Part shown: positions 36,805 through 63,661 of the stretch, one piece after another
Layout: every line of letters starts with the position of its first letter
Numbering within the stretch: the first letter of the stretch is position 1
From: Macrostomum lignano
Taxonomy: Eukaryota
Assembly (NCBI GenBank): GCA_002269645.1
Contig: NIVC01000874.1
Span: 124,001-188,000 of the forward strand
DNA: 64,000 bases
Reading direction: 5' to 3'
Translations under genes and position numbers: made by a program
The notes under the pieces: model-generated
The model's database searches: none
What the model was told of the DNA's origin: nothing
The model's input: only the letters and a program-made list of their open reading frames with translations

Positions 36805-37144
36805 GGCGGCTGGGGCTGAAGCCGGGCGATCGGAGCGATTTTCATTGCGTGTATACTGATTATGTTTAACAGAAAGAATACCACAACTATATCATGCCAA
36901 AAATAATTTACATACTTCTATGGCATGCCTCACATGTCTCAAAAAACATCCATGGGGATGCAGCCTAATGGTCTAGCACTCTTATGTTCCTATGGGCAAG
37001 GCTCAATTCCATGTGCAGTCACATTAATCTGTGGCTAAATTAGAATCTCAGCTTGGTTATAGTTGTGCAGTTAATTCCTTTGTTTCCTAGCCCCCAAGGA
37101 ACAGTGAAGTGTACATGCTTAATAGTTAGGGCTGCTGCTAAACA

Positions 37145-38276
37145 CAGTGGTGCAACCAGGAGGGGCGGGGCGGTTGCCTCACCCCCTTAGGTGGAGACCA
37201 GAAAAAAATCAAAGGGGGGGCCAAGCCAATTTTCGATAAAATACAGAGCCGCACCCCCTCCGCCCCCTTGGGTCTTTACCCTCCAGAATCCGCCTCCTTG
37301 GGTCCTTACCCTCCAGAATCTGCCCCTTGTGTCCTTACCCTCCAGAATCCGCCCCCCTTGGGTCCTTACCCTCCAGAATCCGCCCCCCTTGGGTCCTTAC
37401 CCTCCAGAATCCGCCCCCCTTGGGTCCTTACCCTCCAAAATCCGCCTCCTTGGGTCCTTACCCTCCAGAATCCGCCCCCCCTTGGGTCCTTACCCTCCAG
37501 AATCCGCCCCCCCCTTGGGTCCTTACCCTCCAGAATCCGCCCCCCCCTTGGGTCCTTACCCTCCAGAATCCGCCCCCCCCTTGGGTCCTTACCCTCCAGA
37601 ATCCGCCCCCCTTGGGTCCTTACCCTCCAAAATCCGCCCCCCCTTGGGTCCTTGACCTCCAGAATCCGCCCCTTGGGTCTTTACCCTCCAGAATCTGCCC
37701 CCTTGGGTCTTTACCCTCCAGAATCTGCCCCCTTGGGTCTTTACCCTCCAGAATCTGCCCCCTTGGGTCTTTACCCTCCAGAATCTGCCCCCTTGGGTCT
37801 TTACCCTCCAGAATCTGCCCCCTTGGGTCTTTACCCTCCAGAATCTGCCCCCTTGGGTCTTTACCCTCCAGAATCTGCCCCCTTGGGTCTTTACCCTCCA
37901 GAATCCGCCCCCCTTGGGTCCTTACCCTCCAAAATCCGCCCCCCCTTGGGTCCTTGACCTCCAGAATCCGCCCCTTGGGTCTTTACCCTCCAGAATCTGC
38001 CCCCTTGGGTCTTTACCCTCCAGAATCTGCCCCCTTGGGTCTTTACCCTCCAGAATCCGCCCCCCAAGGTCCTTACCCTCCAGAATCTGCCCCTTGTGTC
38101 CTTACCCTCCAGAATCCGCCCCCCTTGGGTCCTTACCCTCCAGAATCCGCCCCCCCCTTGGGTCCTTACCCTCCAGAATCCGCACCCTTGGGTCTTTACC
38201 CTCCAGAATCCGCCCCCCTTGGGTCCTTACCCTCCAGAATCTACCTCCCCTAAACAAATTTCTGGTTGTGCTACTG
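37145..38276 (+). mobile_element. hAT-like MITE with an internal ~30-bp minisatellite expansion
   Basis: Imperfect TIRs CAGTGGTGCAACCAG / CTGGTTGTGCTACTG; flanking 8-mers GCTAAACA and GCTATACA (7/8 match, TSD-like). Internal array of TTGGGTC(C/T)TTACCCTCCAGAATCCGCCCCC at ~37268-38250. Confidence 0.7.
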
Positions 38277-38949
38277 GCTATACACTCCAGTGTGAATGTG
38301 CCTATGGGAACAACTAGCATGCATATCTTCATATTTATATGCCTACTTAGAGGAGCCAATGTACTGAGTAATAATGTCTCTTGCCAGCTATATGGCAATC
38401 TAATGTTGCCTAAAATTAAAAACAGGTTACATATAGCCCTATATACATAATAGTTACATACAGCCTCAGATATAATATAAAATATTTTATACTAATATAG
38501 AAAAAATTAGAGACATTGGCTATAGAAAAAAGCAATATTAATAGCATTTATAGCCTTTATATATTATATTAAACTTACATTGACTTTGCTGATCTTGCTA
38601 CAATTTGCGGGCTATTTTTGCTATATTAGATTAAAGTGATAAAGCATTATATATAACATAGACAAGCTGTTGAAACCCGCGGATTTTGAACCCGGGGAAT
38701 TCCAATCCCCGGAACTATTTTTGCATGTATTCTAAAATCTAAAGTCATACTCAAACAAAAATTTGTTAATAGTTAGTAGGATAGAAGGTAAACATAAAAT
38801 GGAGCACATTCATGTAAAATTAGAATTTGAGGCAAACATTGATCTTGTTGGCTGGCGTGCTGCGCAGAATGTCAAGCAATGTCTGCCTGACTCTAAAACA
38901 TGTATTGGCAAACTCTGGCCTCTGCCTCACCCTACCTCCCTTGGATCCT

Positions 38950-40160
38950 TTGAAACATCTATCTTCTCTTCTGTTTCCTCTTTTCTCTCTCGTCCCTCCT
39001 CTCTTCTCTCTCTCCTCTCATCTCTTCTCTTTCATCTCACTTATCTCACATATTCTCTCTCTTCTCTCTCTCTACTCTTTTCTCTCTCCTATCTCCCCCT
39101 CTTCTCTCGTCTCTTCCTTCTCCTCTCTATTCTTTCCTCTCTCCTCTCTTCTCTCTCGTCTGCTCTCTCATCTCTCATTTCTCCTCTTTTATCTTTTCTC
39201 ATTTTTCACTGCTCTCTACTCTCTCTTCTCTCTTCACTCTTCTCATTCCTCACTCTCCCCTCTCTTAACACTTCCCTCTTCTCTCCTCTCTTCTCTCTAC
39301 TTTCTTATCTCTCTTTTCTACTCTTTCCTCTCTCTCTCTCTCCTCTTCTTTCCTCTTTCCTCTCTCCCTCTTCTCTCGTCTCTTCCCTCACCTCTCTACT
39401 CTCTCGTCTTTGCTCTCTCATCTCTTCTCATTCCTCTCTGCTCTCCTCTCTCTCTCTCCCTCTCTTCCTTTCTCTCTTATCTCTCCTCTTCCATCTCTCT
39501 TCTCCTCTACTCTTTCCCCTCTCCATTCTCCTCTTTCCTCTCCTCTCTCCTCACTCACTTCTCTCTCTCCCTTTGTCTCTCCTCTCTCCTCTTGTAATCT
39601 CTCCTCTGTTCTCTCTACTCTCCCATCTCTCGTCTGTTCACTCTCGTCTCTGCTCTCTCACCCTTCCTCTTTCATTTGTCATCTTTACTGTATCATATTT
39701 TCTCTCACCTCTCTCCTCTGTACTCTTTTGTTTTCCCTCTTTCGACTCCTCACTTTCCTTTCTCTCCTTTCTTCTCTCTCTTCTCTTCCTTCTTCTATAC
39801 TCTCTTCCTCTCTTGTCTCTCCTCCTTTATCTCTCATTTCTCATCTCTCCTTACACCTCTCTCATCTCTACAACCTTATCTCTTCTCTCTTCCCTTTAAT
39901 CTCTTATCTCTCCTTTCACCTCTCTACTCTCTGCTCTCCTCTCATCTGCAGCTCTTTGCCATCTCATCTCTACTACCTTCTCTCTCCTCTTATCTCTCTC
40001 ATGTCGCTTCTCTTTTCCCCTCTTCTCCCCCCTCTCTCTCTCTCATCGTCCTCAACCCCTCATCCCTCCTATTATCTTCTATCTTTTTTCTTATCTCCTC
40101 TCTCGCCTCTCCTCTCTTTTCGGATCGTCCATTTCTTCTTTTTTCCACTCTCATCTGCCC
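38950..40160. repeat. Degenerate CT-rich (polypyrimidine) low-complexity tract, ~1.2 kb
   Basis: Almost exclusively C/T on the plus strand; the Leu/Ser-rich ORFs are compositional artefacts. Confidence 0.93.
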
Positions 40161-42829
40161 CTCAGCCATGAGCTGGATTCTTTATCTGGCCTTTAAGTTA
40201 AAATTCTGCCCATCCATGCTTGGAAAGCCAGTTTGTGGGACGTAGTAATCTCATGGTTGCTCTCATGCTTTGATCATGTCATCTTTCTTGCCAATTTGCA
40301 GCCCTGAAAGGAAATTGTGTATCTTTAGCTCCACTGCAGTCTGCATCAGTCTAACAACCAAGGAAATATGCATTTCTTAGGAGGCCACTTAAATTTTAAA
40401 GTACTTTTAACAGAAACTTAAAATTTCCATAGTGTGATTAATTTAGTAGGGTTGTATTGGATTGCAATGCCTTTTCATAAATCTTTCGCTTTCATAAACC
40501 ATGCTGGATTCCCTTGATTTGCCAATTGCCAATTGACAGAGAATAAGTCAATGAAAAAAATGTGTCAAGTTTAAAGTCAATTGCTTTATGGGGAGCAAAA
40601 TTTTGGCAGCTGAAAGTTAGTCAATTTTGAAACCCCCTTTTATATACATCTGGACCTAGATAAGGAAAGAGAAGCAGATAGGTGGAAGTTGGGATGGCTA
40701 TCTTGCTGACAAAAAATAGCCTAATTTTAAAAGTGCACAGTGTTGTTCAGGATTAACTTTGAGACTCTAAATTTTATATGATTATGTCAAATTAGTTGAA
40801 GATTGTCTGTCAAATTTGAAAATAATCAGTAGAAGTGGAGTGGCCCTATGGAAGATACTCTCTTTCTACTATTAATATTAATTAGCAACTTAATAGCTAT
40901 TATTAATAATATACTAATTATTTTTAACCAATCATATTCATAAACACTGATATAATAATAGATTTGAAACTAATTACTTATAATAAAAAACTTTAATCTT
41001 TTTCAATGTTTATACCAATTTATTCCTTATCATTATATCTATTAAATCTATTAATATCATTATCTATTTATCAAAAAAGCATTGCTAGGCCCCTATAAAA
41101 TTTTATCAAGAAAGCATTGCTTAAATATGCTATTAATAATTCTATATAAAAAATGGGATAAAGATGCAAATGGGTATTTAATCTTTTGTGCTAGGCTACT
41201 TGATTTATTAATTAGATTATTATTTAAAGGTCAGGCTATGCTGTACAATAAAAGTTGAAACCATAAAAAGAATGCTTTTAAAATAGGCCCCCTAATATAA
41301 TTCTATTATATAATATTGGCACATGACTAAGACTGCAACATACCAAGACTGCCATAGCTATTACTGAATAGGCCTACTAGTATTGAGGGGGAGCTAAAAC
41401 TAATCTTCTAGCATTGCTATTCCTCACATAGGTTTATCTCTCACAGCCTTGTCTTACTGGCTTTCCTATCTACTTATCTCTTCTTTAGCACCATCCAATA
41501 ACACATTGTTGAGCCAAATTCCTCCCCCAGCTCCTCAAGTGTGGCAGTCTTAGTATGTGGCAGTCTTGGTCCTATACCATAATATCTATTTCCCCAAGAC
41601 TTGAAGATCTATATCTATGCCTAATACAAACTATTACCAATAAGAAATGAGTGAAATATATAGACCTAGGCTACATTTATTATCATTTATTTGATTCTAT
41701 TTAGATATTTAAAGCTATGGCCATCTTGGTTATGCACTAGCTAGGCTAGACTCTAGACTAGAGTAGAGTCCTTTCTATAGGCCTAGTGTTAGGGCCTAAT
41801 TATTAAAAACAAATAACATTATTAGAGGCATAAAAATAGCTTTTTAAAAATGATTTAGTAAGCATTCTCAGTTCTCAATAAATCTGCAATGTAATTTAGG
41901 CTTAGCCAAAGCCATATAGGCCTACCTAACCAATTTAGCAATCAGCATCCTGCTAGATTTAATAATATACCATTATACCAATTAGTATAGCAAGTATGAT
42001 AACTAAAAATAGACCCCTTTGACAATGTTCGATTTAGCAAAAAATCATTTATTGACTTTGGTGACAAAACAATACACTCTAGTTCCTAGACCTAGTCTAG
42101 TCGATACGGTACATGTAGGCGGTAGTGTACTTTCGGCGACTTTGTAGTGATTTGATAATATAGTTTTGTGCGCTAATGCTCGGATAATTGTTGTTTGTTT
42201 TTGCAGTGCATTGTGAGCACATGTACATGTATTTCACTGTTTAATAAACTTTATTTAAATTAGTGATCGATCGAGCGCATTTCTGAGTGCTACATGAACG
42301 ATCAGGCACCAAGGACCACCATAAGTAGAAGCCTACGGGGTTCGTAAAAGAGAAAATTTTGAGCCAGTGCGTTCTTGAAAGACGTTTAAAATACGTTTCT
42401 AGTAAAACGAATGTCGCAAGATCTTTTATTTATTGGCGCAATATATACCAAGACCTATACTATTTTCAACATTATCTATTGTTTAATAATTATCCCTTGA
42501 AATAAATGTCTATCACTAATACTAGTTTGTTGTTTTCTTACTTTTTAACAGCGAAAGAAAATAGCGTGCGATTGAATTAGTAGTGTATTGAGGCTAAATT
42601 GAGCATATTTTTTTTCTATTAAAAAGTACTCTTTATCCTTTGGAGTTAGTCTAATTAAAACCAGTGCCTGGCAACTACACCTCAGAGTCAGAGTTGTCAA
42701 TTTTTAATTCCTATTAGATTTGAATGCAGTGAAATAAAAGAATCTTATAGACTTTGCTTTAAATAAGCCAATAGACAATAGTCGCCAAAATACTAGATTT
42801 TTTCATTTTGATAGCCACTCAAAATACCC

Positions 42830-43419: not shown

Positions 43420-45081
43420 TACTAGCATCTGGTATACCTATCTCATTAGCACATCAATCTGGTATCATATATCTTACTAGTATATTAATCTAGTATACCA
43501 TCTCAATAGTACCCCAATCCGGTACACCCATCTCCCTAGCATACCAATCTAGTATACCCATCTCACTAGTACACTAATCTTATATACCCATTTCACTAGC
43601 AGACCAATCTAATGCATCCATTTCACTAATACACCAATTTGATATACCCATTTCACTAGCATACCAATCTTATATACCCATCTCACTAGTACACCAATCT
43701 AATACACCTATCTCACTAGCATACCAATCTGATACACCCATTTCACCAGCACACTAATCTGATACATCCATTTTATCAGTACACCAATCTGATACATCCA
43801 TTTCATTAGTACACCAATCTGGTACACCCATCTCACCAGTACACCAATCTGGTACACCCATCTCACTAGTACACTAATCTTATATACCCATTTCACCAGT
43901 ACACCAATCTGATACATCCATTTCACTAGTACACCAATCTGGTACATTCATCTTACCAGTACACCGATCTGGTACACCCATCTCACTAGTACACCAATCT
44001 GGATGCCCATCTCACTAGTACACCAATCTGGTACACTCATCTCACTAGTACACCAATCTGGTACACTCATCTCACTAGTACACCAATCTGGTACACTCAT
44101 CTCACTAGTACACCAATCTGGTACACTCATCTCACTAGTACACCAATTTGGTACACTCATCTCACTAGTACACCAATCTGGTACACTCATCTCACTAGTA
44201 CACAAATCTGGTACACTCATCTCACTAGTACACCAATCTGGTACACTCATCTCACTAGTACACCAATTTGGTACACTCATCTCACTAGTACACCAATCTG
44301 GTACACTCATCTCACTAGTACACAAATCTGGTACACTCATCTCACTAGTACACCAATCTGGTACACTCATCTCACTAGTACACCAATTTGGTACACTCAT
44401 CTCACTAGTACACCAATCTGGTACACTCATCTCACTAGTACACCAATTTGGTACACTCATCTCACTAGTACACCAATTTGGTACACTCATCTCACTAGTA
44501 CACCAATCTGGTACACTCATCTCACTAGTACACCAATCTGGTACACTCATCTCACTAGTACACAAATCTGGTACACTCATCTCACTAGTACACAAATCTG
44601 GTACACTCATCTCACTAGTACACCAATTTGGTACACTCATCTCACTAGTACACCAATCTGGTACACTCATCTCACTAGTACACCAATTTGGTACACTCAT
44701 CTCACTAGTACACCAATCTGGTACACTCATCTCACTAGTACACCAATTTGGTACACTCATCTCACTAGTACACCAATTTGGTACACTCATCTCACTAGTA
44801 CACCAATCTGGTACACTCATCTCACTAGTACACCAATCTGGTACACTCATCTCACTAGTACACAAATCTGGTACACTCATCTCACTAGTACACCAATCTG
44901 GTACACTCATCTCACTAGTACACCAATTTGGTACACTCATCTCACTAGTACACCAATTTGGTACACTCATCTCACTAGTACACCAATCTGGTACACTCAT
45001 CTCACTAGTACACCAATTTGGTACACTCATCTCACTAGTACACCAATCTGGTACACTCATCTCACTAGTACACCAATTTGG
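43420..45081. repeat. 30-bp minisatellite (CTCACTAGTACACCAATCTGGTACACTCAT) immediately upstream of SLC38A9
   Basis: Homogeneous from ~44000 to 45081 and increasingly diverged toward 43420; ends ~95 bp before the ATG. Confidence 0.97.
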
Positions 45082-45175
45082 TCATGTTCCAGCCAGGTTT
45101 CTGACTCGCCCAGCCTTTCGAGGCCGACTACCTTTTAAAAAAGGAAACACTGGGACAGACGAGCTCTAGAAGTCC

Positions 45176-48100
45176 ATGTCGCAGCCGTCCTCCGAGCGGC
45201 AGCAGCTGCTGATTGCCGGCAAGCAGCGATCATCCGGCCGCTCTGGTGCCGACGCGCCACTCTTGTCGCCTTCGTCATCGTCTCTGGCCAGCGCCGGCCG
45301 CGCCGGATCCTTCGCGCGCACCTACGAGACGGAGCGGGGCACCGCGGTGCGCCTGCCCATCGGCTACGGCTCCGTCAATGCGCCGGCCTCCAGCTACCTG
45401 CCCGACCAGCCCGGCGCCTCCGGCTCCCCCGCCGAGGCCATCGTCCCCGACGGCCAGCAGTCGAGGAGCCGCGCCCGCTCGGAGCCGCCATCGGCGGAGC
45501 CCGGCCCATCCTCGGCGTCGCCAGCGGTGTCGGAGGCGACCTCCGCCATGCTGAGCAGGTACAAGTACTACAGCAGGATCGCGCCTGGTGCCGACAGCCA
45601 GTTGCTTATGCCGCATCACGTGGTGCCGCCGCAGTTCCTACTGATCCTGCCGTTCAAGCAGATCTCAAAGCAGAGCAGCATCATCACCATGTGAGCTGGG
45701 AGTTCTTCATCCTGTCCGTTGCGTTGGTCTTTAGAACTGAGTACTTTTAGGGGAGAAACTGATTACCATCGCTGCGGACCCAGTGATCCAACCCATGACC
45801 CAGTGACCCAATCCAATGACCTCGTGACCCAAACCAATGACCTCGTGACCCAAACCAATGACTTCGTGACCCAAACCAATGACCTCGTGACCCAAACCCA
45901 TGACCCAGTGACCCAATCCAATGACCCAGTGACCCAAACCATGACATCGTGACGCTGCCCATGATTCAATGATTCCACCCATAACCCAGTAACCCAACCT
46001 ATGACCCATTGATCCTACCCATGACCTTGGGACATAACCCGTGACCTTGGGACACAACTCATGACCTCGTGATGCAAACACACGACCCAGTGACCCAGCC
46101 CATGATTCAATGATCCCGCCCATAACCGAGTGACCCAACCCATGACCCAGTGACCCAATCCATAACCCAGGGACCCAAACCCATGACCCAGTGACCCAGC
46201 TGTGTCAAACAAGCACCCGCCAATGCCTCCGCCCCACCCGACCGCAGCTTCAGCATCTGGAACACGATGATGGGCACCTCGCTGCTGAGCATGCCCTGGG
46301 CGGTGAAGGAGGCCGGCTTCGCCACCAGCCTGGTGGTGCTGCTGATCATGACTGGCATCACATTCTACACTGCTTACCTGGTGCTCAGGAGCTACTCAAA
46401 CTTGGGTAAGTGGTGGCTTAGTTATAGGCAGGGGCCTGTGCGCACCCTGGCGCACCTGAGGCCACATTGTCACACAACCAGCGAGAGGCATTACTGCCTA
46501 TTCCGCTGACTCCCCTGAGCAGGCACACAAGCGTACGCAGTCATACGCACAGGCACACACCCACACAGGAGTGTACAGCGGCCATAACTTTATTGATGGC
46601 TAGGCATGTACACTTCACTGTGCCTTGGGGGTTGGCCTTCAAGGCCGCTAATTGCACGAGCAGAGCCAAGCCGAGATTCCAATTTAGCCCCAAATAAATG
46701 CGACTGCACTTGGAATCGAGCCTGGGCCGCTGGCACGTAAGGGCGCCGCACCAGACCACTGGGCTACGGCCTCCATAAGCGATCTCTCAAAATTTATTGT
46801 TTTACTAAAATCCTATATAACTCACTACTAGATATTAATTATTAATTTTTACCTCAGGCCGCAGCGGAGTTCGAGTGTCCGAGTTCTCTGACGTGTGCAA
46901 ATTTTACCTGGGCCGCTACGGCGAGCTCGTCTCTGTGCTGTTCTCCGCCGTGGCCCTACTGGGCGCCATCATCGTCTACTGGGTGCTGCTGTCCAACTTC
47001 CTTTACCAGGTTGTTATTGCGCCTGTGTGGGCTCGGGAGCAGACCGGCTCTTCTCTTCTGGCCTTCTTCTGCCTAAAATGCCCTAAAAATCCATGGGTTT
47101 TATGCCTAATAAAATGAGAAACTCCCTGTCTCAATAGCGTTTGTTTTGGCATGAAGCCGGCCTTCAAATAATTTTCTAAGAAACGGAAGTGGTTGGCAGC
47201 CCCCCGGTCCCTCAGGGCGGCTGCTTCATCCACAGCCAGCTGCACAATGTCACCGAGATTGACGGCTCCCCTCCCCGGTCCCTCAGGGCGGCTGCTTCAT
47301 TCACAGCCAGCTGCACAATGTCACCGAGATTGACGGCACCCCTCCCCTCCCCGGTCCCTCAGGGCGGCTGCTTCATCCACAGCCAGCTGTACAATGTCAC
47401 CGAGATTGACGGCACCCCGAACGAATTCCGGGTTGGCAACCGCACATTTCACGTGCTGTGCCCGAACTACCCGCCGCTGCCCGTGCAGCCCACCGGCCTG
47501 CCCAACGTCACCACGCCGCCTCCCGCCACCGTCGCCCCGCCGGACTTCAGAAACGGCACCGAGCCTCTGTTCCAGCGGCTGTGGAGCAAAACCGAGACCG
47601 TGCCGTTCTATCTGGTCCTCCTGCTGTTCCCGCTTGTCTGCATCAAGTCTCCGGGCTTCTTCTCCAAGTTCAACGCTCTCGGCACCGTGGCCGTGGTCTT
47701 TGTGCTGGTCTTTGTTGCCGTGAAAGCCGCCCAGTGGGGCTTCCATCTGGACTTCAGCGCCACTGATGCTGCCAATGTCATCCGGCGTGAGTCTGGCAGC
47801 CTCGCATCCTTTTGAATGGCCTCAGTGCAGCCTCGCCTCCCCGTTTGTTCACCTCTCAGCTTCTGCTTTCACTCTTCATCTGTCTCTCCACCTATTTCTT
47901 TCACTCTCTTCAACTGTCACTCCATTTCTTTCACTCTCTCCAACTGTCACTCCGTTTCTTTCACTCTCTCCATCTGTCACTCTATTTCTTTCACTCTCTC
48001 CAACTGTGACTCCATTTCTTTCACTCTCTCCAACTGTGACTCCGTTTCTTTCACTCTCTCCAACTGTCACTCCATTTCTTTCACTCTCTCCAACTGTGAC

Positions 48101-51100
48101 TCCGTTTGTTTCACTCTCTCCAACTGTCACTCCGTTTGTTTCACTCTCTCCAACTGTCACTCCGTTTGTTTCACTCTCTCCAACTGTCACTCCGTTTCTT
48201 TCACTCTCTCCATCTGTCACTCCATTTTTTTCACTCTCTCCAACTGTCACTCCATTTCTTTCACTCTCTCCAACTGTCACTCCATTTCTTTCACTCTCTC
48301 CAACTGTGACTCCATTTCTTTCACTCTCTCTGGTTATCTTTTTAATTAGCCAAAATTCACATGTTTGCGAAGTCTTTTGGCCTTTGGCGGATGCTGTCTT
48401 GTCCGTCTTCAGTCTACAAGTATACAATTTTGGTTATATTAACATTTTCAAGCTAATAAGGCATTGCAGCCCACGTGTTTACTGGCAATGTTATGCAGGC
48501 AGCTTATGTAGCTGCGAATATCGCTTTTACAGCTGCAGCGCTGGTGACTGGAAGTCGCTTTGCCAGAACTTCATTTGCTTAGTGCGTAACGCGAATTTAC
48601 TTAACCAGCGCAAATTTATGCTTTTGAGTAAATAGCCTCCGTGTTTTCAGGTGTCTGACGTGGTTAGAAACTTTATTATAGTCTTAATGCTCAGCTGCGA
48701 TTGTGAATTGCAGTCAGTCAGTCAGTCCGTCAGTCAGTCAGGCAGTCAGTCAGTCAGGCAGTCAGTCAGTCAGGCAGTCAGTCAGGCAGTCAGTCAGTCA
48801 GGCAGTCAGTCAGGCAGTCAGTCAGTCAGGCAGTCAGGCAGTCAGTCAGGCAGTCAGTCAGTCAGGCAGTCAGTCAGGCAGTCAGGCAGGCAGTCAGTCA
48901 GGCAGTCAGGCAGTCAGTCAGGCAGTCAGGCAGTCAGGCAGGCAGTCAGTCAGTCAGGCAGTCAGTCAGTCAGTCAGGCAGTCAGTCAGGCAGGCAGTCA
49001 GTCAGGCAGTCAGTCAGGCAGTCAGTCAGTCAGGCAGTCAGTCAGGCAGTCAGTCAGTCAGGCAGTCAGGCAGTCAGTCAGTCAGGCAGTCAGTCAGGCA
49101 GTCAGGCAGGCAGTCAGTCAGGCAGTCAGGCAGTCAGTCAGGCAGTCAGGCAGTCAGGCAGGCAGTCAGTCAGTCAGGCAGTCAGTCAGTCAGTCAGGCA
49201 GTCAGTCAGGCAGGCAGTCAGTCAGGCAGTCAGTCAGGCAGTCAGTCAGTCAGTCAGTCAGGCAGTCAGTCAGGCAGTCAGTCAGGCAGTCAGTCAGTCA
49301 GGCAGTCAGTCAGTCAGTCAGGCAGTCAGTCAGGCAGTCAGGCAGTCAGTCAGGCAGTCAGTCAGTCAGTCAGTCAGTCAGTCAGTCAGTCAGGCAGTCA
49401 GTCAGTCAGCCGCTGCCGCAACCCTGCAGAGCTGAGGCCGAGCTTCGCCCTCATGACCGGTGTGCTGTCCCTGGCGCTGTTCTGCCACAATGCGGTGATC
49501 ACGCTGACGCGGAACCAGCTGCGGCCAGAGAATAATGTAAATCTTTTGATGCTGGGCCGGTGCAAATGTGTTTTTTTTCATTTCTCACCCCGGCTTTGCA
49601 GCTCACCGCATTTACTTAGCAATCTTGCATGCATGTTTGTCACTTGTTCAGTGTGAACCGACACAGGTCGTGAATTTGTTTGTTACCCGCCCGCTTTCAG
49701 AGTTCTCGCCCAGCTTTGTGTCCATGGCTGGCGTGTTGTCCCTGGCCCTGTTTAGCCACTGCTTCATTGTCTCCCTGATGCGGGAGCAGAGGCAGCCGCA
49801 GAATAATGTAATTTCGGCTCAGGGAACGCCTGGACTGGGGCTTGACTGGCTTTTATTAGCTCAAGCTTTCAACTGCGATTATCATTTTTTTAATTTCAAA
49901 GAATGCTGCTTGAGCGAAAGAATTAATATTTCACAAATTTATGCTTAAATTTTATATTGCTCGGGTTTTTTTAAGTGGAATATCTGGAGTATCATTTTTA
50001 ATCAAGTCCCAACGCTAGGATACAAAATATTAGTTTCTAAGGTGGAGCTCCGTTGCTAGGGTAAACCTTGTCCCTAAGGTGTGGATCCTGTTGCTAAGGT
50101 GTCAGATCCTGTTGCTAAGGTAATCCCTTTGCTAAGGGGTTAACTCTTGCTAAGGTTTAAACCCTGTTGCTAACGTGTAAACCCTGTTGCTAAGATGTGG
50201 ATCCTGTTGCTAAGGTGTGGATCCTGTTGCTAAGGTGTAAACCCTGTTGCTAAGGTGTAAACCCTGTTGCTAAGGTGTAAACCCTGTTGCTAAGGTGTAA
50301 ACCCTGTTGCTAAGGTGTAGATCCTGTTGCTAGAGTGTAAACCCTGTTGCTAAGATGTAACCCTGTTGCTAAGGTGTAAACCCTGTTGCTAAAGTGTAAA
50401 CCCTGTTGCTAAAGTGTAAACCCTGTTGCTAAGGTGTAAACCCTGTTGCTAAGGTGTAAACCCTGTTGCTAAAGTGTAAACCCTGTTGCCAAGATGTAAC
50501 CCTGTTGCTAAGGTGTAAACCCTGTTGCTAAGGTGTAAACCCTGTTGCTAAGGTGTAAACCCTGTTGCTAAGGTGTAAACCCTGTTGCTAAGGTGTAAAC
50601 CCTGTTGCTAAAGTGTAAACCCTGTTGCTAAGGTGTAAACCCTGTTGCTAAGGTGTAAACCCTGTTGCTAAAGTGTAAACCCTGTTGCCAAGATGTAACC
50701 CTGTTGCTAAGGTGTAAACCCTGTTGCTAAGGTGTAGATCCTGTTGCTAAAGTGTAAACCCTGTTGCCAAGATGTAACCCTGTTGCTAAGGTGTGGATAC
50801 TGTTGCTAAGGTGTAAACCCTGTTGCTAAGGTTTAGATCCTGTTGCTAAGGTGTAAACCCTGTTGCCAAGGTTTAACCCTGTTGCTAAGGTGTGGATCCT
50901 GTTGCTAAGGTTTAACCCTGTTGCTAAGGTTTGGATCCTGTTGCTAAAGTGTAGATCCTGTTGCTAAGGGGTTAAGTCTTTTGCTATGGTGTAATCCCAT
51001 ATTGCTCAGAGGTACACTCTTTTTCCATTGCTTAGGTAACTCGAAAATATTAAGTTGGAATTTAGTATATGGAATTTAATTCGTTCAAGTCCGAATTTAT

Positions 51101-54100
51101 TGCGGCTTAAGTTTTATGACTATGAGTTTCTGTGATTTGCAAGCTCTGATTGCCAAAGAATTCCGCGCTGCTTACCTGTACTCAAAATGACTTTCATTTC
51201 AACTCTTGCCAGATATCAGTGCGGCTTTTGCAAATTCACGTTCAAAATTCTGGAGTTAAGATACTGATATCCTACTTGCAGTAGGCGAAATGCAAAATGC
51301 AGTAAATTTTCTGTCTATTTTTAGACTCGAGACCTGCTAATTGCCTACGTGTGCGTCTCGATCACCTACATTATTGTGGGCCTCGTGTTCTATGCGGTCT
51401 ACCCGCTGGCTAAGGACTGCATTGAGCAGGTGAGCTGGGCAGGTGATAAATACTCTGACTACTATATTTAAACGCAGTTTGTATCAGTTAAACACACTGA
51501 CTGCACCAGTTAAACACACTGACTGCACCAGTTAAACACACTGACTGCACCAGTTAGACACACTGACTACACCAGTTAAACACACTGACTACACCAGTTA
51601 AACACACTGACTGCACCAGTTAAACACACTGACTGCACCAGTTAAACACACTGACTGCACCAGTTAAACACACTGACTACACCAGTTAAACACACTGACT
51701 GCACCAGTTAAACACACTGACTACACCAGTTAAACACACTGACTGCACCAGTTAAACACACTGACTGACTGCACCAGTTAAACACACTGACTGCACCAGT
51801 TAAACACACTGACTGCACCAGTTAAACACACTGACTGCACCAGTTAAACACACTGACTGCACCAGTTAAACACACTGACTGCACCAGTTAAACACACTGA
51901 CTACACCAGTTAAACACACTGACTGCACCAGTTAAACACACTGACTGACTGCACCAGTTAAACACACTGACTGCACCAGTTAAACACACTGACTGCACCA
52001 GTTAAACACACAGACTGCACCAGTTAAACACACTGACTACACCAGTTAAACACACTGACTGCACCAGTTAAACACACTGACTACACCAGTTAAACACACT
52101 GACTACACCAGTTAAACACACTGACTGCACCAGTTAAACACACTGACTGCACCAGTTAAACACACTGACTACACCAGTTAAACACACTGACTGCACCAGT
52201 TAAACACACTGACTGCACCAGTTAAACACACTGACTGCACCAGTTAAACACACTGACTGCACCAGTTAAACACACTGACTGACTGCACCAGTTAAACACA
52301 CTGACTGCACCAGTTAAACACACTGACTGCACCAGTTAAACACACTGACTGCACCAGTTAAACACACTGACTGCACCAGTTAAACACACTGACTGCACCA
52401 GTTAAACACACTGACTGCACCAGTTAAACACACTGACTGACTGCACCAGTTAAACACACTGACTGCACCAGTTAAACACACTGACTGCACCAGTTAAACA
52501 CACTGACTGCACCAGTTAAACACACTGACTACACCAGTTAAACACACTGACTGCACCAGTTAAACACACTGACTGCACCAGTTAAACACACTGACTGCAC
52601 CAGTTAAACACACTGACTGACTGCACCAGTTAAACACACTGACTGCACCAGTTAAACACACTGACTGCACCAGTTAAACACACTGACTGCACCAGTTAAA
52701 CACACTGACTGCACCAGTTAAACACACTGACTGCACCAGTTAAACACACTGACTGCACCAGTTAAACACACTGACTGACTGCACCAGTTAAACACACTGA
52801 CTGCACCAGTTAAACACACTGACTGCACCAGTTAAACACACTGACTGCACCAGTTAAACACACTGACTGCACCAGTTAAACACACTGACTGCACCAGTTA
52901 AACACACTGACTACACCAGTTAAACACACTGACTGCACCAGTTAAACACACTGACTGCACCAGTTAAACACACTGACTGCACCAGTTAAACACACTGACT
53001 ACACCAGTTAGACACACTGACTACACCAGTTAGACACACTGACTACACCAGTTAAACACACTGACTGCACCAGTTAAACACACTGACTGCACCAGTTAGA
53101 CACACTGACTACACCAGTTAAACACACTGACTACACCAGTTAAACACACTGACTGCACCAGTTAAACACACTGACTGCACCAGTTAAACACACTGACTGC
53201 ACCAGTTAAACACACTGACTGCACCAGTTAAACACACTGACTGCACCAGTTAAACACACTGACTGCACCAGTTAAACACACTGACTGACTGCACCAGTTA
53301 AACACACTGACTGCACCAGTTAAACACACTGACTGCACCAGTTAAACACACTGACTGCACCAGTTAAACACACTGACTGCACCAGTTAAACACACTGACT
53401 GCACCAGTTAAACACACTGACTGACTGCACCAGTTAAACACACTGACTGCACCAGTTAAACACACTGACTGCACCAGTTAAACACACTGACTACACCAGT
53501 TAAACACACTGACTGCACCAGTTAAACACACTGACTGCACCAGTTAGACACACTGACTGCACCAGTTAAACACACTGACTACACCAGTTAAACACACTGA
53601 CTGCACCAGTTAAACACACTGACTGACTGCACCAGTTAAACACACTGACTACACCAGTTAAACACACTGACTGCACCAGTTAAACACTGACTACACCAGT
53701 TAAACACACTGACTACACCAGTTAAACACACTGACTGCACCAGTTAAACACACTGACTGCACCAGTTAAACACACTGACTGCACCAGTTAAACACACTGA
53801 CTACACCAGTTAAACACACTGACTGCACCAGTTAAACACACTGACTGCACCAGTTAAACACACTGACTGCACCAGTTAAACACACTGACTACACCAGTTA
53901 AACACACTGACTGCACCAGTTGAACACACTGACTGCACCAGTTAAACACACTGACTGCACCAGTTAAACACACTGACTGCACCAGTTAAACACACTGACT
54001 GCACCAGTTAAACACACTGACTGCACCAGTTAGACACACTGACTACACCAGTTAAACACACTGACTGCACCAGTTAAACACACTGACTGCACCAGTTAAA

Positions 54101-55854
54101 CACACTGACTGCACCAGTTAAACACACTGACTGCACCAGTTAAACACACAGACTGCACCAGTTAACACACTGACTACACCAGTTAAACACACTGACTGCA
54201 CCAGTTAAACACACTGACTACACCAGTTAAACACACTGACTACACCAGTTAAACACACTGACTGCACCAGTTAAACACACTGACTGCACCAGTTAAACAC
54301 ACTGACTGCACCAGTTAAACACACTGACTACACCAGTTAGACACACTGACTGCACCAGTTAAACACACTGACTGCACCAGTTAAACACACTGACTGCACC
54401 AGTTAAACACACTGACTGCACCAGTTAAACACACTGACTGACTGCACCAGTTAAACACACTGACTGCACCAGTTAAACACACTGACTGCACCAGTTAAAC
54501 ACACTGACTGCACCAGTTAAACACACTGACTACACCAGTTAAACACACTGACTACACCAGTTAAACACACTGACTGCACCAGTTAAACACACTGACTGCA
54601 CCAGTTAAACACACTGACTACACCAGTTAAACACTGACTGCACCAGTTAAACACACTGACTACACCAGTTAAACACTGACTGCACCAGTTAAACACATGA
54701 ACTGCCACCCGAACCCCGCAGAACCTGCTGGACAATATCCCCAGCGCGGATGTGCTGGCCTTCACCGCCCGAATCTTTCTGTTCGTCCAGATGGTGACGG
54801 TGTTCCCGCTGCTGATGTACATTCTGCGGGCCCAGCTGATGCACTACCTGTTCCACAGCGTCTACCCCAGCTGGGTGCACGTCAGCGTGCTGCACGTGTC
54901 CGTCATGGGGGTGGCCATTGTTGTGGCCGTGTTCTACCCCAATATTGGCAACATTCTCAGGTGATTGGAGGGAGCCAGTTGAAGTATTAGTAACGTAACA
55001 GTAAGGTTATTCCTTATAGTTACCCTTCCATAATACGATTTATTGTTTCCAAGGCGGAAATACCATGTTGCTATGCTGAAAATTCCCGTTTGCTATGCTA
55101 AAAATACCCGGTTGCTATGCTAAAAATACCTGGTTGCTATGCTGGAATTATTCCGGTTGCTATGCTGGAATTCACCCGGTTGCTAAGCTAGAAATACCCG
55201 GTTGCTATGCTAGAAATAAGTACTCTGTTACTATGCTGGAATTAACCCGGTTGCTATGCTGGAATTATCCCGGTTGCTATGCTGGAATTAAACCGGTTGC
55301 TATGCTGGAATTATCCCGGTTGCTATGCTGGAATTCACCCGTTTGCTATGCTGGAATTAAACCGGTTGCTATTCTGGAATTAAACCGGTTGCTATGCTGG
55401 AATTATCCCGGTTGCTATGCTAGAAATAAATACTCTATTGCTATACTGGAATTAACCCGGTCGCTATGCTAGAAATACCTGGTTGCTATGCTAGGAATAC
55501 CCGGTTGCTATGCTAGAAATACCCGGTTGCTATGCTAGAAATACCCGGTTGCTATGCTGGAAATACCCGGTTGTTACGCTGGAATTAACTCGGTTGCTAT
55601 GCTAGAAATACATTGTTGCTTAACTAGAAATACCCTGTTACTATGAGTGCACCTCACCCCCCCCGACCGGACCGGACAGGTTCTCCGGGGCTCTGTGTGG
55701 GTTGGCTTACATCTTCACGCTGCCGCCGCTGATCACCCTGCTGGAGGCCCGCATGAACGGCACCCTGACGGTGGGCCGCCTGGTGCCTCACTGCTGCATC
55801 ATCCTGATCGGCCTGGCCAACTTTGCCAGTCAGTTTTTCTTCCTGAACAAGTAG
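45176..55854 (+). CDS. SLC38A9: Lysosomal amino-acid transporter / arginine sensor SLC38A9. Exons 45176-45690, 46248-46405, 46858-47009, 47363-47786, [49430-49536 or 49701-49807], 51325-51429, 54722-54960, 55680-55854
   Basis: RYKYYSRI...HVVP...[69 protein letters not shown]...DCIEQNLLDN; RFSGALCGLAYIFTLP...GLANFASQF. All match SLC38A9 motifs, and the splice phases chain correctly to TAG at 55852-55854. Confidence 0.95.
45780..46200. repeat. ~21-bp diverged minisatellite (GACCCAGTGACCCAAACCAAT-like) in SLC38A9 intron 1
   Basis: Tandem GACCC/TGACC units. Confidence 0.85.
46469..46771 (-). mobile_element. tRNA-derived SINE copy 1
   Basis: Minus strand begins GGCCGTAGCCCAGTGG (A box)...GGCTCGATTCCAAGTGCAGTC (B box); the body is shared with 58979-59310. 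Confidence 0.75.
47880..48332. repeat. 30-bp minisatellite (TTCTTTCACTCTCTCCAACTGTCACTCCAT)
   Basis: About 15 tandem copies in an SLC38A9 intron. Confidence 0.95.
48711..49409. repeat. (CAGT)n/(CAGG)n compound microsatellite
   Basis: Tetranucleotide array ending ~20 nt before the exon at 49430. Confidence 0.97.
50050..50990. repeat. 20-bp minisatellite (CCTGTTGCTAAGGTGTAAAC)
   Basis: Tandem intronic array. Confidence 0.96.
51485..54697. repeat. 22-bp minisatellite (CCAGTTAAACACACTGACTGCA), ~3.2 kb
   Basis: Fills almost the whole intron 51430-54721; G/A variant units and occasional extra CTGA. Confidence 0.98.
55060..55645. repeat. ~23-bp minisatellite (CCCGGTTGCTATGCTGGAATTAT-like)
   Basis: Tandem array in the last SLC38A9 intron. 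Confidence 0.92.
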
Positions 55855-61035: not shown

Positions 61036-63416
61036 TCAGCACCTTGTTTCGTAGAAGCCGCTCTTGCCGATGTACCGAACCCACTTGATGACGTCATGAT
61101 CCGAGTAGTTCAGCTTGGACTCGAACACCTTCAGGTAGCGGACTTTGAAGCCGGATGGAGCGAAGGGCACCTGCGGGAATTTCAGTGTGAGATTCCGATG
61201 CAAGTTTGGGATTCACATGCAGCTAATGTACATGGGATTCTAATGTACAGTGTGAGATTCCAGTGCAGCTGATGTAGTGTGGGATTCACATGCAGCTAAT
61301 GTACATGGGATTCTAATGTACAGTGTGAGATTCCAGTGCAGCTGATGTAGTGTGGGATTCCAGTGCAGCCAATGTACAGTGTGGGATTACAGTGCAGCCA
61401 ATGTACAGTGTGGGATTCCAATGTAGCTAATGTACAATGTGGAATTCCAATGTAGATAATGTACAGTGTGAATTCCAGTGTAGCTAATGTACAGTGTGGA
61501 ATTCCAATGTAGCTAATGTACAGTGTGGAATTCCAATGTAGCTAATGTACAGTGTGGAATTCCAATGTAGCTAATGTACAGTGTGAATTCCAGTGTAGCT
61601 AATGTACAGTGTGGAATTCCAATGTAGCTAATGTACAGTGTGGAATTCCAATGTAGCTAATGTACAGTGTGGGATTCCAGTGTAGCTAATGTACAGTGAG
61701 GGATTCCAGTGTAGTTAATGTACAGTGAGGGATTCCAGTGTAGCTAATGTACAGTGAGGGATTCCAGTGTAGTTAATGTACAGTGAGGGATTCCAGTGTA
61801 GCTAATGTACAGTGAGGGATTCCAGTGTAGCTAATGTACAGTGAGGGATTCCAGTGTTGCTAATGTACAGTGTGGGATTCCAGCAAGCAGTGATCCGACA
61901 TAGCCACCTCAAAGTTCATGGAGATGGGCGGTCGGGTCCACTTCTTGGCTTTGTCGGTGGAGCTGAGCATGTCGATCTCGGCGCTCAGCTGCAGCTCCTT
62001 CATGCCGCCCATCCGCTTGATCTTCCACACGATGGCGTTGTCAGAGGCCTTGTACCTGGCCCGGCCCTTCATGCACACCACCTGCACTCCGCTGGTGTTC
62101 AGCGGGGTGGGGATTCGAACCTCGACCTTCTGGGCCAGCAGGGACGGCTTGAAGTTGCTCTTCACCACCACCTTGACCTCCATGCCGGACCGGCCGGTCT
62201 CGCGCACCAACGGGATGACCCGGAACGGCAGGCTGATGTCCTTGGTGGTCCGGTAGGTCATGAGTTCGAACTCGCCGTCCGGCGGGATGAACGAGATGGA
62301 GTGCTCGGTGTCGAACTTGCTGAGCTTCACGCACTGGTGGAACTGGCAGTCGTCGATGGCGATGTGGCCGGACTTGCCCCCGCCGCCTCCCGAGGCTTCG
62401 CCGGCGCCGCCGCCGCGCCTGCTGTCCACCACGACCTTGTCGTTGATGCCGAACTTGCACTCGGGCATGCCGGACAGGTAGGACTTCATTCGGACACGGC
62501 CGGACACGTGGGCGGACAGCACCTGGCCCTGGGGCGACATCAGCAGGTTGACGGACTCGATCACGTCAAGGAACAGCTCGTTGCGCCGGTACTTGATGCC
62601 CTCCCGGCGCCAGGCGATCTGTCCCGTGACCTGCGGGATATTTAATGGTATACGGATGCTTGGGCGGTTGAAATTAATAGACAAAATAGAAGGCTGTCTA
62701 CGCAACGGAACGCTCACTACGTCAATTAAGGTTAGTTGAAGGTTCAAACATTAATATTAATAATCTCTGTGCAATACGTTAGTGAAGGCTCTCTACGTCA
62801 TTTAGGAATCTCAACGTTAGATAAGGATCCCTACGTTAACGAAGGTTCCCAAACTTAACTAAGAATGCCTACGTTAAAGACGGCTCACTTCGCTACGATA
62901 TCCTACGAGTACAATAAATAGTCGAGGCTCTCTACGTAAATGAAGTCTCCCCCACCCCACCTGATTGGTAATTCTCGTGGTCTCCTCCTTGGTCTGCGCC
63001 CTGACGCCCTGCTGGGTGATGTAGGTCTTCAGCACGCCCGTGTCGGTGTTCTGCGGGTAGCCATAGTCCAGCAGCTCGTCAAGCAGCTCGTAGATGAGCA
63101 CAAAGTTATTCTTGATGTTCTCCTCGTTGATCTTGCCGAAGTAGGACACCATGACTTCGATCATCTTGTAGAGAAACTGGAACACCAGCGATGCGCTGAC
63201 GTTCTTCTTGGCCACCGCGCACAGCCAGATGTTCGACCGCTTCACGTGGAAAAAGCTGGTGCGGCCGATGCTGCTGACTGGCGACCGCACCTGCTGCCTG
63301 GCGTGAATGACGTTCACCCTGAAGGCGTCCACCGCCTCGCGACCGATGTCGTCTCGGTAGACCCGCGAGATTAGCACCTCGCCTTTGTGGTTGTAGATGA
63401 ATAGGCCGCCTATCAT
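61036..63416 (-). CDS. AP2M1: AP-2 clathrin adaptor mu subunit; exons 62961-63416, 61908-62630, 61036-61170
   Basis: [25 protein letters not shown]...; [23 protein letters not shown]...[11 protein letters not shown]; [44 protein letters not shown]. Phase-0 GT/AG junctions. Confidence 0.98.
61190..61880. repeat. 29-bp minisatellite (AATGTACAGTGTGGAATTCCAATGTAGCT) in AP2M1 intron 2
   Basis: Tandem array filling most of the intron. Confidence 0.95.
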
Positions 63417-63661
63417 GGCTGAGCTGTGTGACACTGCCCTGCTCAGCTGGCAATTAACTAGTGCATGAATGCAACGGTACTAAATAAATAAATTTTTGTT
63501 AACATCCATAACAAAGGACAGAATAGCTAAGGGGTTGATATGCTCATATATACAATATGAGCATAGGGAATAAAATAGGGAATAGCCCAAATAGAGCACT
63601 AAGGATATATATATATTTAACAGGGTGCAGTAGCTTTGGGGTTAACAAGAATCATGCTTGG

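What the first reader, a model, noticed from the sequence alone, without database searches (positions are those of the whole stretch)
49430..49807. Two homologous 107-nt, apparently mutually exclusive exons encode alternative TM6 helices of SLC38A9
Seen: exon A 49430-49536 (LRPSFALMTGVLSLALFCHNAVITLTRNQLRPENN) and exon B 49701-49807 (FSPSFVSMAGVLSLALFSHCFIVSLMREQRQPQNN). Both are 107 nt, have AG/GT ends and identical phases (1 to 0), and lie 164 nt apart; including both would shift the frame. Established: this segment corresponds to vertebrate SLC38A9 GVLTLAFFIHNCII (TM6), and TM1 plus TM6 form the substrate site and gate in LeuT-fold transporters. SLC38A9 is the lysosomal arginine sensor upstream of mTORC1. 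Inference: a splicing switch (xHN vs xHC) could retune substrate specificity or sensing. I am not aware of such exons being reported for this gene.
Basis: partly seen in the sequence, partly recalled or inferred. Interest (0 to 1): 0.72.

Follow-up and report, generated by a model that had tools for sequence, protein, structure and literature searches.

The report
Alternative TM6 exon pair in flatworm SLC38A9
The flatworm Macrostomum lignano's copy of the lysosomal arginine-sensor gene SLC38A9 carries two tandem, interchangeable 107-base exons for its sixth membrane helix; the second is unannotated, and the same exon is already annotated as an either/or choice in sea urchins, starfish, acorn worms, amphioxus and clams, so it is a new example of a known splicing device, not a new kind of thing.

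Summary
Exon A (49430-49536) and exon B (49701-49807) are both 107 nt, AG/GT-bounded, in the same phase, 66% identical in DNA and 19/35 in protein. Each alone gives a complete 624-aa SLC38A9-type protein; both together or neither shifts the frame.

The window is Macrostomum lignano contig NIVC01000874.1, gene Mlig026656. Every deposited model uses exon A, and I found no transcript or protein containing exon B, so its use is inferred.

Evidence that B is a real coding exon:
- It keeps 9 of 13 family-conserved positions, against about 4 expected after neutral decay.
- Its flanks no longer resemble those of A.
- It groups with the only TM6 exon of a Macrostomum-specific paralogue, which shares the unusual H-C-F motif.

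RefSeq already holds equal-length isoform pairs differing only in this exon for echinoderms, hemichordates, amphioxus and two bivalves. No paper describing this was found.

The variable residues correspond to zebrafish 362/363, and Cys363 contacts the regulatory N-terminal plug. Any retuning of sensing or transport is plausible but untested.

Verdict: new, unannotated member of a known kind, of moderate interest.

The parts
45176..45690 (+). Exon 1 (start codon; N-terminal regulatory region with YKYYSR and HHVVPP motifs)
   Evidence: Splice model. It matches the deposited protein PAA47819.1/PAA75573.1 (P0121), which differs by one residue from P0002 and carries the window's residue there. It aligns with zebrafish 7KGV from residue 45.
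46248..46405 (+). Exon 2 (TM1 with the IWNTMMGTS motif, and TM2)
46858..47009 (+). Exon 3 (TM3)
   Evidence: The donor GTTGTT is weak, but the junction matches the deposited protein.
47363..47786 (+). Exon 4 (glycosylated luminal loop, TM4-TM5). The donor at 47786 serves either alternative exon.
   Evidence: The acceptor is duplicated at 47216 within a 76-nt tandem repeat. The 47363 acceptor is the one used in the deposited protein.
49430..49536 (+). Exon A: the canonical TM6 exon (H-N-A), used in all deposited models
   Evidence: Its best matches are the single TM6 exons of Lineus (22/35) and Schistosoma (21/35).
49537..49700 (+). 164-nt intron between the two alternative exons
   Evidence: There is a GTAAAT donor and a TTTCAG acceptor, with a possible branch site TGTTAC about 17-18 nt upstream of the acceptor, read from the sequence. 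At this length a steric-hindrance mechanism is unlikely unless a distal branch point is used (inference).
49701..49807 (+). Exon B: unannotated alternative TM6 exon (H-C-F)
   Evidence: It keeps family-conserved residues far beyond the neutral expectation. It groups with the paralogue's exon. An isoform with B scores 118.7 bits against Pfam Aa_trans, versus 111.9 for A.
51325..51429 (+). Exon 6 (TM7 start; the acceptor serves either alternative exon)
54722..54960 (+). Exon 7
55680..55854 (+). Exon 8 with the stop codon

Best explanation
Exons A and B are an old tandem duplicate of the TM6-coding exon of the Macrostomum lignano SLC38A9 orthologue. Both are kept as coding exons.

The exon is 107 nt, which is not a multiple of three. 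Only mRNAs with exactly one of the two can encode the transporter. Double inclusion puts a stop codon in exon B and skipping both shifts the frame; I infer that such mRNAs are removed by nonsense-mediated decay.

The result would be two proteins, identical except for 16 of 35 residues. These residues span the luminal end of TM6, the start of TM6b lining the cytosolic vestibule, and the loop after it. The central GVLSLALF segment is unchanged.

Exon A is the canonical form (H-N-A). Exon B replaces the nearly invariant Asn with Cys and the next residue with Phe (H-C-F), as does the sole TM6 exon of a Macrostomum-specific paralogue.

Shown: the anatomy, the homology, the frame logic, selection on B as coding sequence, and annotated either/or isoforms at the same exon in other phyla.

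Inferred: that B is actually spliced in, that its use is regulated, and that the two forms differ in gating, N-plug docking or transport.
For: - Anatomy and frame logic.
- Gene identity: 100%-coverage hit to M. lignano PAA77180.1 and orthologues named SLC38A9 or neutral amino acid transporter 9. E 2.5e-125 to zebrafish SLC38A9 structure 7KGV. Pfam Aa_trans.
- B behaves as selected coding sequence. After 36 random substitutions on exon A, 53% of simulated sequences stay stop-free, and these keep 4.1 of 13 family-conserved positions, against 9 in B (joint P about 0.0009). The family-profile score is +47 for B against -56 +/- 19, with 0 of 20,000 simulations reaching it. dN/dS between A and B is 0.36/0.88. 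Intron flanks of A and B no longer align.
- B is old. It groups with the paralogue's only TM6 exon (86% bootstrap; 63% nt identity and shared H-C-F). The paralogue arose within the Macrostomum lineage (100% bootstrap). B shares no flank similarity with the paralogue, which argues against a recent copy.
- Both exons are intact in all three genomic copies.
- Comparative support: equal-length isoform pairs differing only in this exon exist in Branchiostoma, Ptychodera, Saccoglossus, Asterias (2 species), Patiria, Acanthaster, Strongylocentrotus, Lytechinus (2 species), Antedon, Mya and Ruditapes, the last with 3 variants. In four loci the two exons are tandem, 107 nt and AG-bounded, with a GT donor wherever it could be read.
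- Asteroids also lost Asn362 (to Met) in the downstream exon only, which parallels exon B.
Against: - No transcript, EST-derived or predicted protein containing exon B was found. All four M. lignano models (P0001, P0002, P0121, P0122) use exon A. A search with an isoform-B segment returned nothing, although that search was barely sensitive, scoring only 2 candidates.
- The three M. lignano gene copies are 98-99% identical in introns and exons alike, so they carry no information on selection.
- Exon B lacks Asn362, which is 97% conserved among 115 orthologues.
- Schistosoma bovis has a single TM6 exon and the one planarian protein examined for each of two species carries a single variant, so B is not supported by another flatworm.
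- No splicing-regulatory RNA structure was found. The only exon A/intron complementarity (10 nt) is at chance level and is not preserved in the other copies.
Confidence: 0.7

Rival explanations
1. Exon B is a silent relic of a tandem exon duplication, or of an old transfer from the paralogue. It is no longer spliced into productive mRNA, and the gene makes only the exon-A protein.
For: - Every deposited model uses exon A only.
- No B-containing protein is in the databases searched.
- B has lost the near-invariant Asn362.
- The other flatworm examined at genome level has one exon.
Against: - A relic with about 34% nucleotide divergence should have lost its frame, exact length, splice sites and family-conserved residues. 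B keeps all of these (P about 0.0009 or less). Meanwhile its flanks have diverged beyond alignment.
- The same H-C-F TM6 is the only TM6 of the paralogue, which is kept in three genomic copies. That sequence can therefore probably serve as a working TM6.
- Pfam Aa_trans scores isoform B slightly higher than isoform A.
Confidence: 0.2
2. Exon B acts as a 'poison' exon. It is included together with exon A to create a premature stop and lower SLC38A9 output through nonsense-mediated decay, and it is not used to make a second protein.
For: A+B inclusion gives a stop codon inside exon B. The intron between the two exons is long enough to be spliced.
Against: A poison exon does not need to keep a TM6-like reading frame, yet B's peptide is strongly family-like in the frame it would have when it replaces A. 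In the frame it would have after A it is meaningless. In other phyla the homologous pairs are annotated as substitution isoforms of equal length.
Confidence: 0.07
3. The pair is an assembly or collapse artefact that mixes the gene with its paralogue.
For: Exon B resembles the paralogue's exon, and the M. lignano genome is highly duplicated.
Against: - The A-intron-B arrangement occurs in three separate contigs, with one synonymous difference in B.
- B is only 63% identical in DNA to the paralogue's exon and shares no flanks with it.
- The paralogue's locus is separately assembled with a single exon.
Confidence: 0.02

Closest known systems
RefSeq-annotated alternative TM6 exons of SLC38A9 orthologues in echinoderms, hemichordates, cephalochordates and bivalves (for example S. 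purpuratus XP_030851454.1/XP_030851456.1, B. lanceolatum XP_066298611.1/XP_066298612.1, P. flava XP_070563040.1/XP_070563041.1, M. arenaria XP_052775192.1/XP_052775193.1)
   Same: - It is the same exon, with the same 107-nt length, phase and boundaries, in tandem arrangement.
- The isoforms differ only in the 35 residues aligned with zebrafish 343-377.
- The variable hot spot includes residue 363, and in starfish residue 362 as well, as in exon B.
   Different: - Those pairs are annotated isoforms, whereas the M. lignano exon B is unannotated and unproven in RNA.
- The deuterostome pairs are H-N-A/G upstream and H-N/M-C downstream. M. lignano has H-N-A then H-C-F.
- Exon trees place the Macrostomum exons with flatworm exons and the bivalve exons together, and the order in Mya differs. 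The duplications may therefore be independent.
Tandem-duplicated, mutually exclusive exons in general (human catalogues: PMC5740500, PMC8373072, PMC9741552)
   Same: Adjacent homologous exons of equal length and phase substitute for one another. When the length is not a multiple of three, the reading frame enforces exclusivity.
   Different: SLC38A9 does not occur in the main text of those three catalogue papers in the full-text search (their supplementary tables were not searched). Frog orthologues show one variant in the data seen here. The mechanism that would choose between A and B here is unknown.
SLC7A2 CAT-2A/CAT-2B (from my own knowledge, not verified in a paper read here)
   Same: An arginine-transporting solute carrier in which two mutually exclusive exons swap a roughly 40-residue segment and change the apparent substrate affinity.
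   Different: It belongs to a different transporter family, the segment lies elsewhere in the protein, and it acts at the plasma membrane. Its functional difference has been measured, whereas none has been measured for SLC38A9.

Membership tests
SLC38A9 orthologue (SLC38 / Aa_trans family) | Aa_trans (PF01490) transporter domain | tested here: met
   Pfam scores are 111.9 bits (isoform A) and 118.7 bits (isoform B), against a cut-off of 25.6.
SLC38A9 orthologue (SLC38 / Aa_trans family) | Closest relatives are SLC38A9 proteins, and the protein aligns end to end with solved SLC38A9 | tested here: met
   Hits are named SLC38A9 or neutral amino acid transporter 9 across Metazoa. Zebrafish 7KGV matches at E 2.5e-125 over residues 117-620. 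An NJ tree places it with flatworm orthologues.
SLC38A9 orthologue (SLC38 / Aa_trans family) | TM1 WNTMM/GTS motif and the N-terminal regulatory region (YYSR motif, N-plug HV(I/V)P) | tested here: met
   IWNTMMGTS, YKYYSR and PHHVVPP are present and align with the zebrafish motifs. The motif roles are taken from 10.1101/288233 and PMC9994763.
SLC38A9 orthologue (SLC38 / Aa_trans family) | Lysosomal localisation, arginine-dependent Rag-Ragulator signalling | not testable with these tools
   This needs cell biology.
Mutually exclusive exon pair from tandem exon duplication | Adjacent exons between the same flanking exons, with equal length, equal phase and canonical splice sites | tested here: met
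Mutually exclusive exon pair from tandem exon duplication | Significant sequence homology between the two exons | tested here: met
   Identity is 71/107 nt and 19/35 aa, with blastn E 8e-10.
Mutually exclusive exon pair from tandem exon duplication | Only single inclusion preserves the reading frame | tested here: met
Mutually exclusive exon pair from tandem exon duplication | Both exons under purifying selection as coding sequence | tested here: met
   Neutral-decay simulation and family-profile score, dN/dS 0.40, and diverged flanks. The within-species copies are uninformative.
Mutually exclusive exon pair from tandem exon duplication | Each exon seen in transcripts, never (or only in NMD targets) together | not testable with these tools
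   No RNA-seq access. The databases hold only exon-A models for M. lignano.
Mutually exclusive exon pair from tandem exon duplication | Conservation of the second exon in related species | tested here: inconclusive
   No other Macrostomum sequence is in the collections. Schistosoma bovis has one copy. Homologous pairs exist in distant phyla, but they may be independent.

The most novel reading that the evidence does not exclude
The TM6 exon of SLC38A9 is a deep or repeatedly re-invented either/or switch across invertebrate bilaterians. It toggles the vestibule residues at positions 362/363, and residue 363 contacts the inhibitory N-terminal plug in the zebrafish structure. This would give each animal two versions of its lysosomal arginine sensor, with different coupling between transport and mTORC1 signalling. 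Vertebrates, ecdysozoans and parasitic flatworms would have kept only one version. Macrostomum exon B (H-C-F) and the starfish H-M-C exon would be parallel Asn362-less forms.
Probability: 0.25. Interest if true: 0.7.

Novelty: new member of a known kind. Interest (0 to 1): 0.5.

Why it matters
SLC38A9 links lysosomal arginine to mTORC1. Its TM1/TM6 pair and its N-terminal plug are the moving parts of that switch.

Natural isoform pairs that differ only in TM6, recurring in several phyla and differing at the residue that binds the plug, would be ready-made structure-function variants. They could help separate transport from signalling.

For M. lignano, a regeneration and stem-cell model, the gene model is incomplete, because exon B is missing from the annotation.

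For splicing evolution, this is a further case of the same exon being duplicated and used alternatively in distant lineages. It is annotated in databases but, as far as I could find, not described in a paper.

Tried and rejected
- **Transcript evidence for exon B.** A 90-aa isoform-B query gave only 2 word-sharing candidates and no hit, so the index is not sensitive for short queries. The 90% cluster of the gene holds 3 members, all with exon A. No sequencing-run-derived (Logan) contigs of this gene exist in the collection, so the absence is uninformative.\n- **Selection from the other M. lignano copies.** Exons and introns are equally 98-99% identical. The 4 synonymous changes in A and the 1 in B carry no weight.\n- **RNA structure that could choose between the exons.** The only candidate is a 10-nt exon-A/intron complement. 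About 0.25 such pairs are expected by chance, and it is weakened in L002 and L004. Rejected.\n- **Recent gene conversion from the paralogue.** No flank similarity, and 63% exon identity. Rejected as recent; an old transfer is not excluded.\n- **One ancient bilaterian origin with a fixed exon order.** The order (small residue upstream, Cys downstream) holds in four deuterostome loci and loosely in Macrostomum. Mya has three copies in another order, and exon trees group by lineage. I did not try another route.\n- **Locus look-ups.** Three failed as 'not on record'.\n- **A citation for CAT-2A/2B as mutually exclusive exons.** Not found in the paper I opened, so that comparison is marked as my own knowledge.
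Full report
**1. The observation**

- Exon A (49430-49536) and exon B (49701-49807) are each 107 nt.
- Each follows an AG and precedes a GT. They lie 164 nt apart.
- Each is open in one frame only.
- They share 71/107 bases and 19/35 residues.
- blastn aligns only the exon bodies (E 8e-10). The intron flanks have no detectable similarity.
- No third copy is present in the window.

**2. The gene**

I rebuilt the gene on the + strand from open segments and splice signals.

| Exon | Coordinates |
|---|---|
| 1 | 45176-45690 |
| 2 | 46248-46405 |
| 3 | 46858-47009 |
| 4 | 47363-47786 |
| A or B | 49430-49536 or 49701-49807 |
| 6 | 51325-51429 |
| 7 | 54722-54960 |
| 8 | 55680-55854 |

With A alone or B alone the product is 624 aa. 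With both, a stop falls inside exon B. With neither, the frame shifts.

The A form differs by one residue from Macrostomum lignano PAA77180.1 (P0002) and carries the P0121 residue at that position (PAA47819.1/PAA75573.1, BOX15_Mlig026656g1/g3). The window is contig NIVC01000874.1.

The protein carries Pfam Aa_trans. It aligns over residues 117-620 with zebrafish SLC38A9 structure 7KGV at E 2.5e-125. It has the TM1 WNTMM/GTS motif and the N-terminal YYSR and HV(V)P motifs. It is an SLC38A9 orthologue.

**3. What the exon encodes**

In zebrafish numbering the exon covers F343 to N377. This span includes:
- R344 of the luminal gate and P348 at the start of TM6a;
- A357, whose carbonyl is part of the predicted Na1 site;
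- TM6b, which borders the cytosolic vestibule where arginine was seen (10.1101/288233).

In the plug-bound structure the carbonyl of Ile84 of the N-terminal plug is bonded to Cys363 on TM6 (PMC9994763).

How A and B compare:
- They are identical in the central GVLSLALF.
- They differ at 16 positions.
- At the R344 position, A has R and B has S. This position is poorly conserved in the family.
- At 362, A has N and B has C. N is found in 97% of 115 orthologues.
- At 363, A has A and B has F. The family splits 51% C and 37% A.

**4. Is exon B a real coding exon?**

Direct evidence is missing.
- All four deposited M. lignano models use A.
- The 90% cluster of the gene holds nothing else.
- A search with a B-specific segment found nothing, but that search was barely sensitive.
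- The collection holds no RNA-derived contigs of this gene at all, so the absence says little.

Indirect evidence is good. I simulated neutral decay by putting 36 random substitutions on exon A.

| Measure | Simulated | Exon B |
|---|---|---|
| Stop-free | 53% | yes |
| Family-conserved positions kept (of 13) | 4.1 on average, among the stop-free | 9 (joint P about 0.0009) |
| Family-profile score | -56 +/- 19 | +47 (reached by 0 of 20,000) |

Further points:
- dN/dS between A and B is 0.36/0.88.
- The flanks have diverged completely while the exon has not.
- Isoform B scores slightly better than A against Aa_trans.
- Both exons are intact in the two other genomic copies. Those copies are 98-99% identical throughout, so they add no power.

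**5. Origin within Macrostomum**

M. lignano has a second SLC38A9-like gene (P0003, 54% identical). An NJ tree places it as a lineage-specific duplicate (100% bootstrap).

Its locus has a single TM6 exon, and the neighbouring introns are too short to hide another. That exon reads ...LFCHCFLIL..., sharing the otherwise unique H-C-F with exon B.

Nucleotide identities:

| Pair | Identity |
|---|---|
| B vs paralogue | 63% |
| A vs paralogue | 53% |
| A vs B | 66% |

In an exon tree B groups with the paralogue's exon (86% bootstrap), and exon A joins that pair without meaningful support. No flank similarity links B to the paralogue.

The simplest reading is that the A/B duplication is at least as old as the gene duplication and that the paralogue kept only the B type. 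An old transfer from the paralogue is not excluded. Either way B has stayed intact over a synonymous distance near 0.9.

**6. The same exon elsewhere**

The hit list contained many 'isoform X1/X2' entries. Reading cluster members and comparing equal-length pairs showed isoforms that differ only in this exon in:
- cephalochordates: Branchiostoma lanceolatum and two B. floridae hybrids;
- hemichordates: Ptychodera flava, and Saccoglossus kowalevskii across two annotation releases;
- starfish: Asterias rubens, A. amurensis, Patiria miniata and Acanthaster planci;
- sea urchins: Strongylocentrotus purpuratus, Lytechinus variegatus and L. pictus;
- a crinoid: Antedon mediterranea;
- bivalves: Mya arenaria, and Ruditapes philippinarum with three variants.

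In the four deuterostome loci I could fetch, the two exons are tandem, each 107 nt, in the same phase and preceded by AG. A GT donor follows each one that could be read; the downstream B. floridae exon runs into an assembly gap. They are separated by 358-1957 nt. The upstream exon reads H-N-A/G and the downstream one H-N-C, or H-M-C in starfish.

Only one variant was seen in clusters from a coral, horseshoe crabs, ticks, Daphnia, Bemisia, Caenorhabditis, Biomphalaria, schistosomes and frogs. The Schistosoma bovis locus has a single copy.

Mya has three tandem copies in the order Q-N-S, Q-N-C, H-N-A.

Exon trees group bivalve exons together and echinoderm exons together, while hemichordate and amphioxus exons group by type. 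With 35 residues I cannot decide between one old duplication with later turnover or co-evolution and several independent duplications.

**7. Mechanism**

Established from the sequence: only single inclusion is productive.

Inferred:
- Double inclusion and skipping are cleared by nonsense-mediated decay.
- A choice mechanism exists. I found no convincing competing RNA structure.
- The 164-nt intron, with a possible branch site near the acceptor, argues against steric exclusion.

Functional consequences are inference. The swapped residues sit at the luminal end of TM6 and at the start of TM6b. They include the position that contacts the N-plug in zebrafish and the neighbouring near-invariant Asn. 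A change in gating, plug docking or arginine release is more specific, and in my view more likely, than a change of substrate identity.

Starfish independently replaced the same Asn (with Met) in their downstream exon only. This suggests that an Asn362-less alternative is tolerated and perhaps useful.

**8. Novelty**

Six full-text searches found no paper describing alternative TM6 exons of SLC38A9 or mentioning the M. lignano gene. The human catalogues of tandem-duplicated exons do not mention the gene in their main text (supplementary tables were not searched).

The isoforms are nevertheless present in RefSeq for many invertebrates. The phenomenon is therefore annotated but undescribed. The M. 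lignano case is a new, unannotated member of a well-known kind of event.

**9. Verdict**

- Confidence is about 0.7 that exon B is a used, mutually exclusive coding exon, and about 0.2 that it is a silent relic.
- Interest is 0.5.

Noticed in passing
window 47202-47418: A 76-nt tandem repeat (2.9 copies) duplicates the acceptor and first codons of exon 4 (acceptors at 47216 and 47363). Using the upstream acceptor would stay in frame and add 49 residues to the luminal loop. An older gene model (P0001) reads part of such a copy.
   Followed up: partly
window 48711-49409: A roughly 700-nt (CAGT)n microsatellite ends only 20 nt before the acceptor of exon A. Its length differs between the genomic copies. 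Whether it affects the use of exon A is unknown.
   Followed up: no
window 51485-54705; also 47894-48330, 50052-50998 and 55056-55611: The introns of the gene are largely made of tandem arrays: 22-nt x 145 copies, 30-nt x 15, 20-nt x 48 and 23-nt x 24.
   Followed up: no
L009 51654-51758 (Mya arenaria): There is a third tandem TM6 exon copy (VKTTLPALTGVASLAYFVQNSLLATIRAQKHPENT) upstream of the two annotated alternatives. It is not found in any of the three Mya isoforms read here, and it resembles Ruditapes variant X1.
   Followed up: partly
L007 about 21196 onward (Branchiostoma floridae): The downstream alternative exon runs into a run of N in this assembly. This probably explains why that annotation lists only the upstream variant.
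   Followed up: no
L005 1-203 and L006 3390-9714: A phosphoglucomutase (PGM1-like) gene lies on the opposite strand next to, or inside, the 5' part of SLC38A9 in both Ptychodera and Antedon. This is conserved microsynteny.
   Followed up: no
P0155 (Acanthaster X3, 567 aa) and P0138 (Tubulanus X3, 539 aa): No TM6-exon motif was found in either annotated isoform. The Acanthaster one is 35 residues shorter than the full isoforms (602 aa), although skipping a 107-nt exon should shift the frame. I did not examine how these models are built.
   Followed up: no
window 3263-14032 (- strand): Large ORFs with PKD, REJ, Polycystin_dom and PKD_channel domains indicate a polycystin-1-like gene.
   Followed up: partly
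window 61860-63434 (- strand): ORFs with the adaptor-complex medium-subunit domain and a clathrin-adaptor small-chain-like N-terminal domain indicate an AP complex mu-subunit gene.
   Followed up: partly
window 21014-21796 (+ strand): A retrotransposon fragment with RNase H and integrase zinc-binding domains.
   Followed up: no
window 37100-40250 and 43500-45170: Long, strongly strand-skewed tandem or low-complexity arrays lie just upstream of the SLC38A9 start codon. GC skew drops to -0.58.
   Followed up: no
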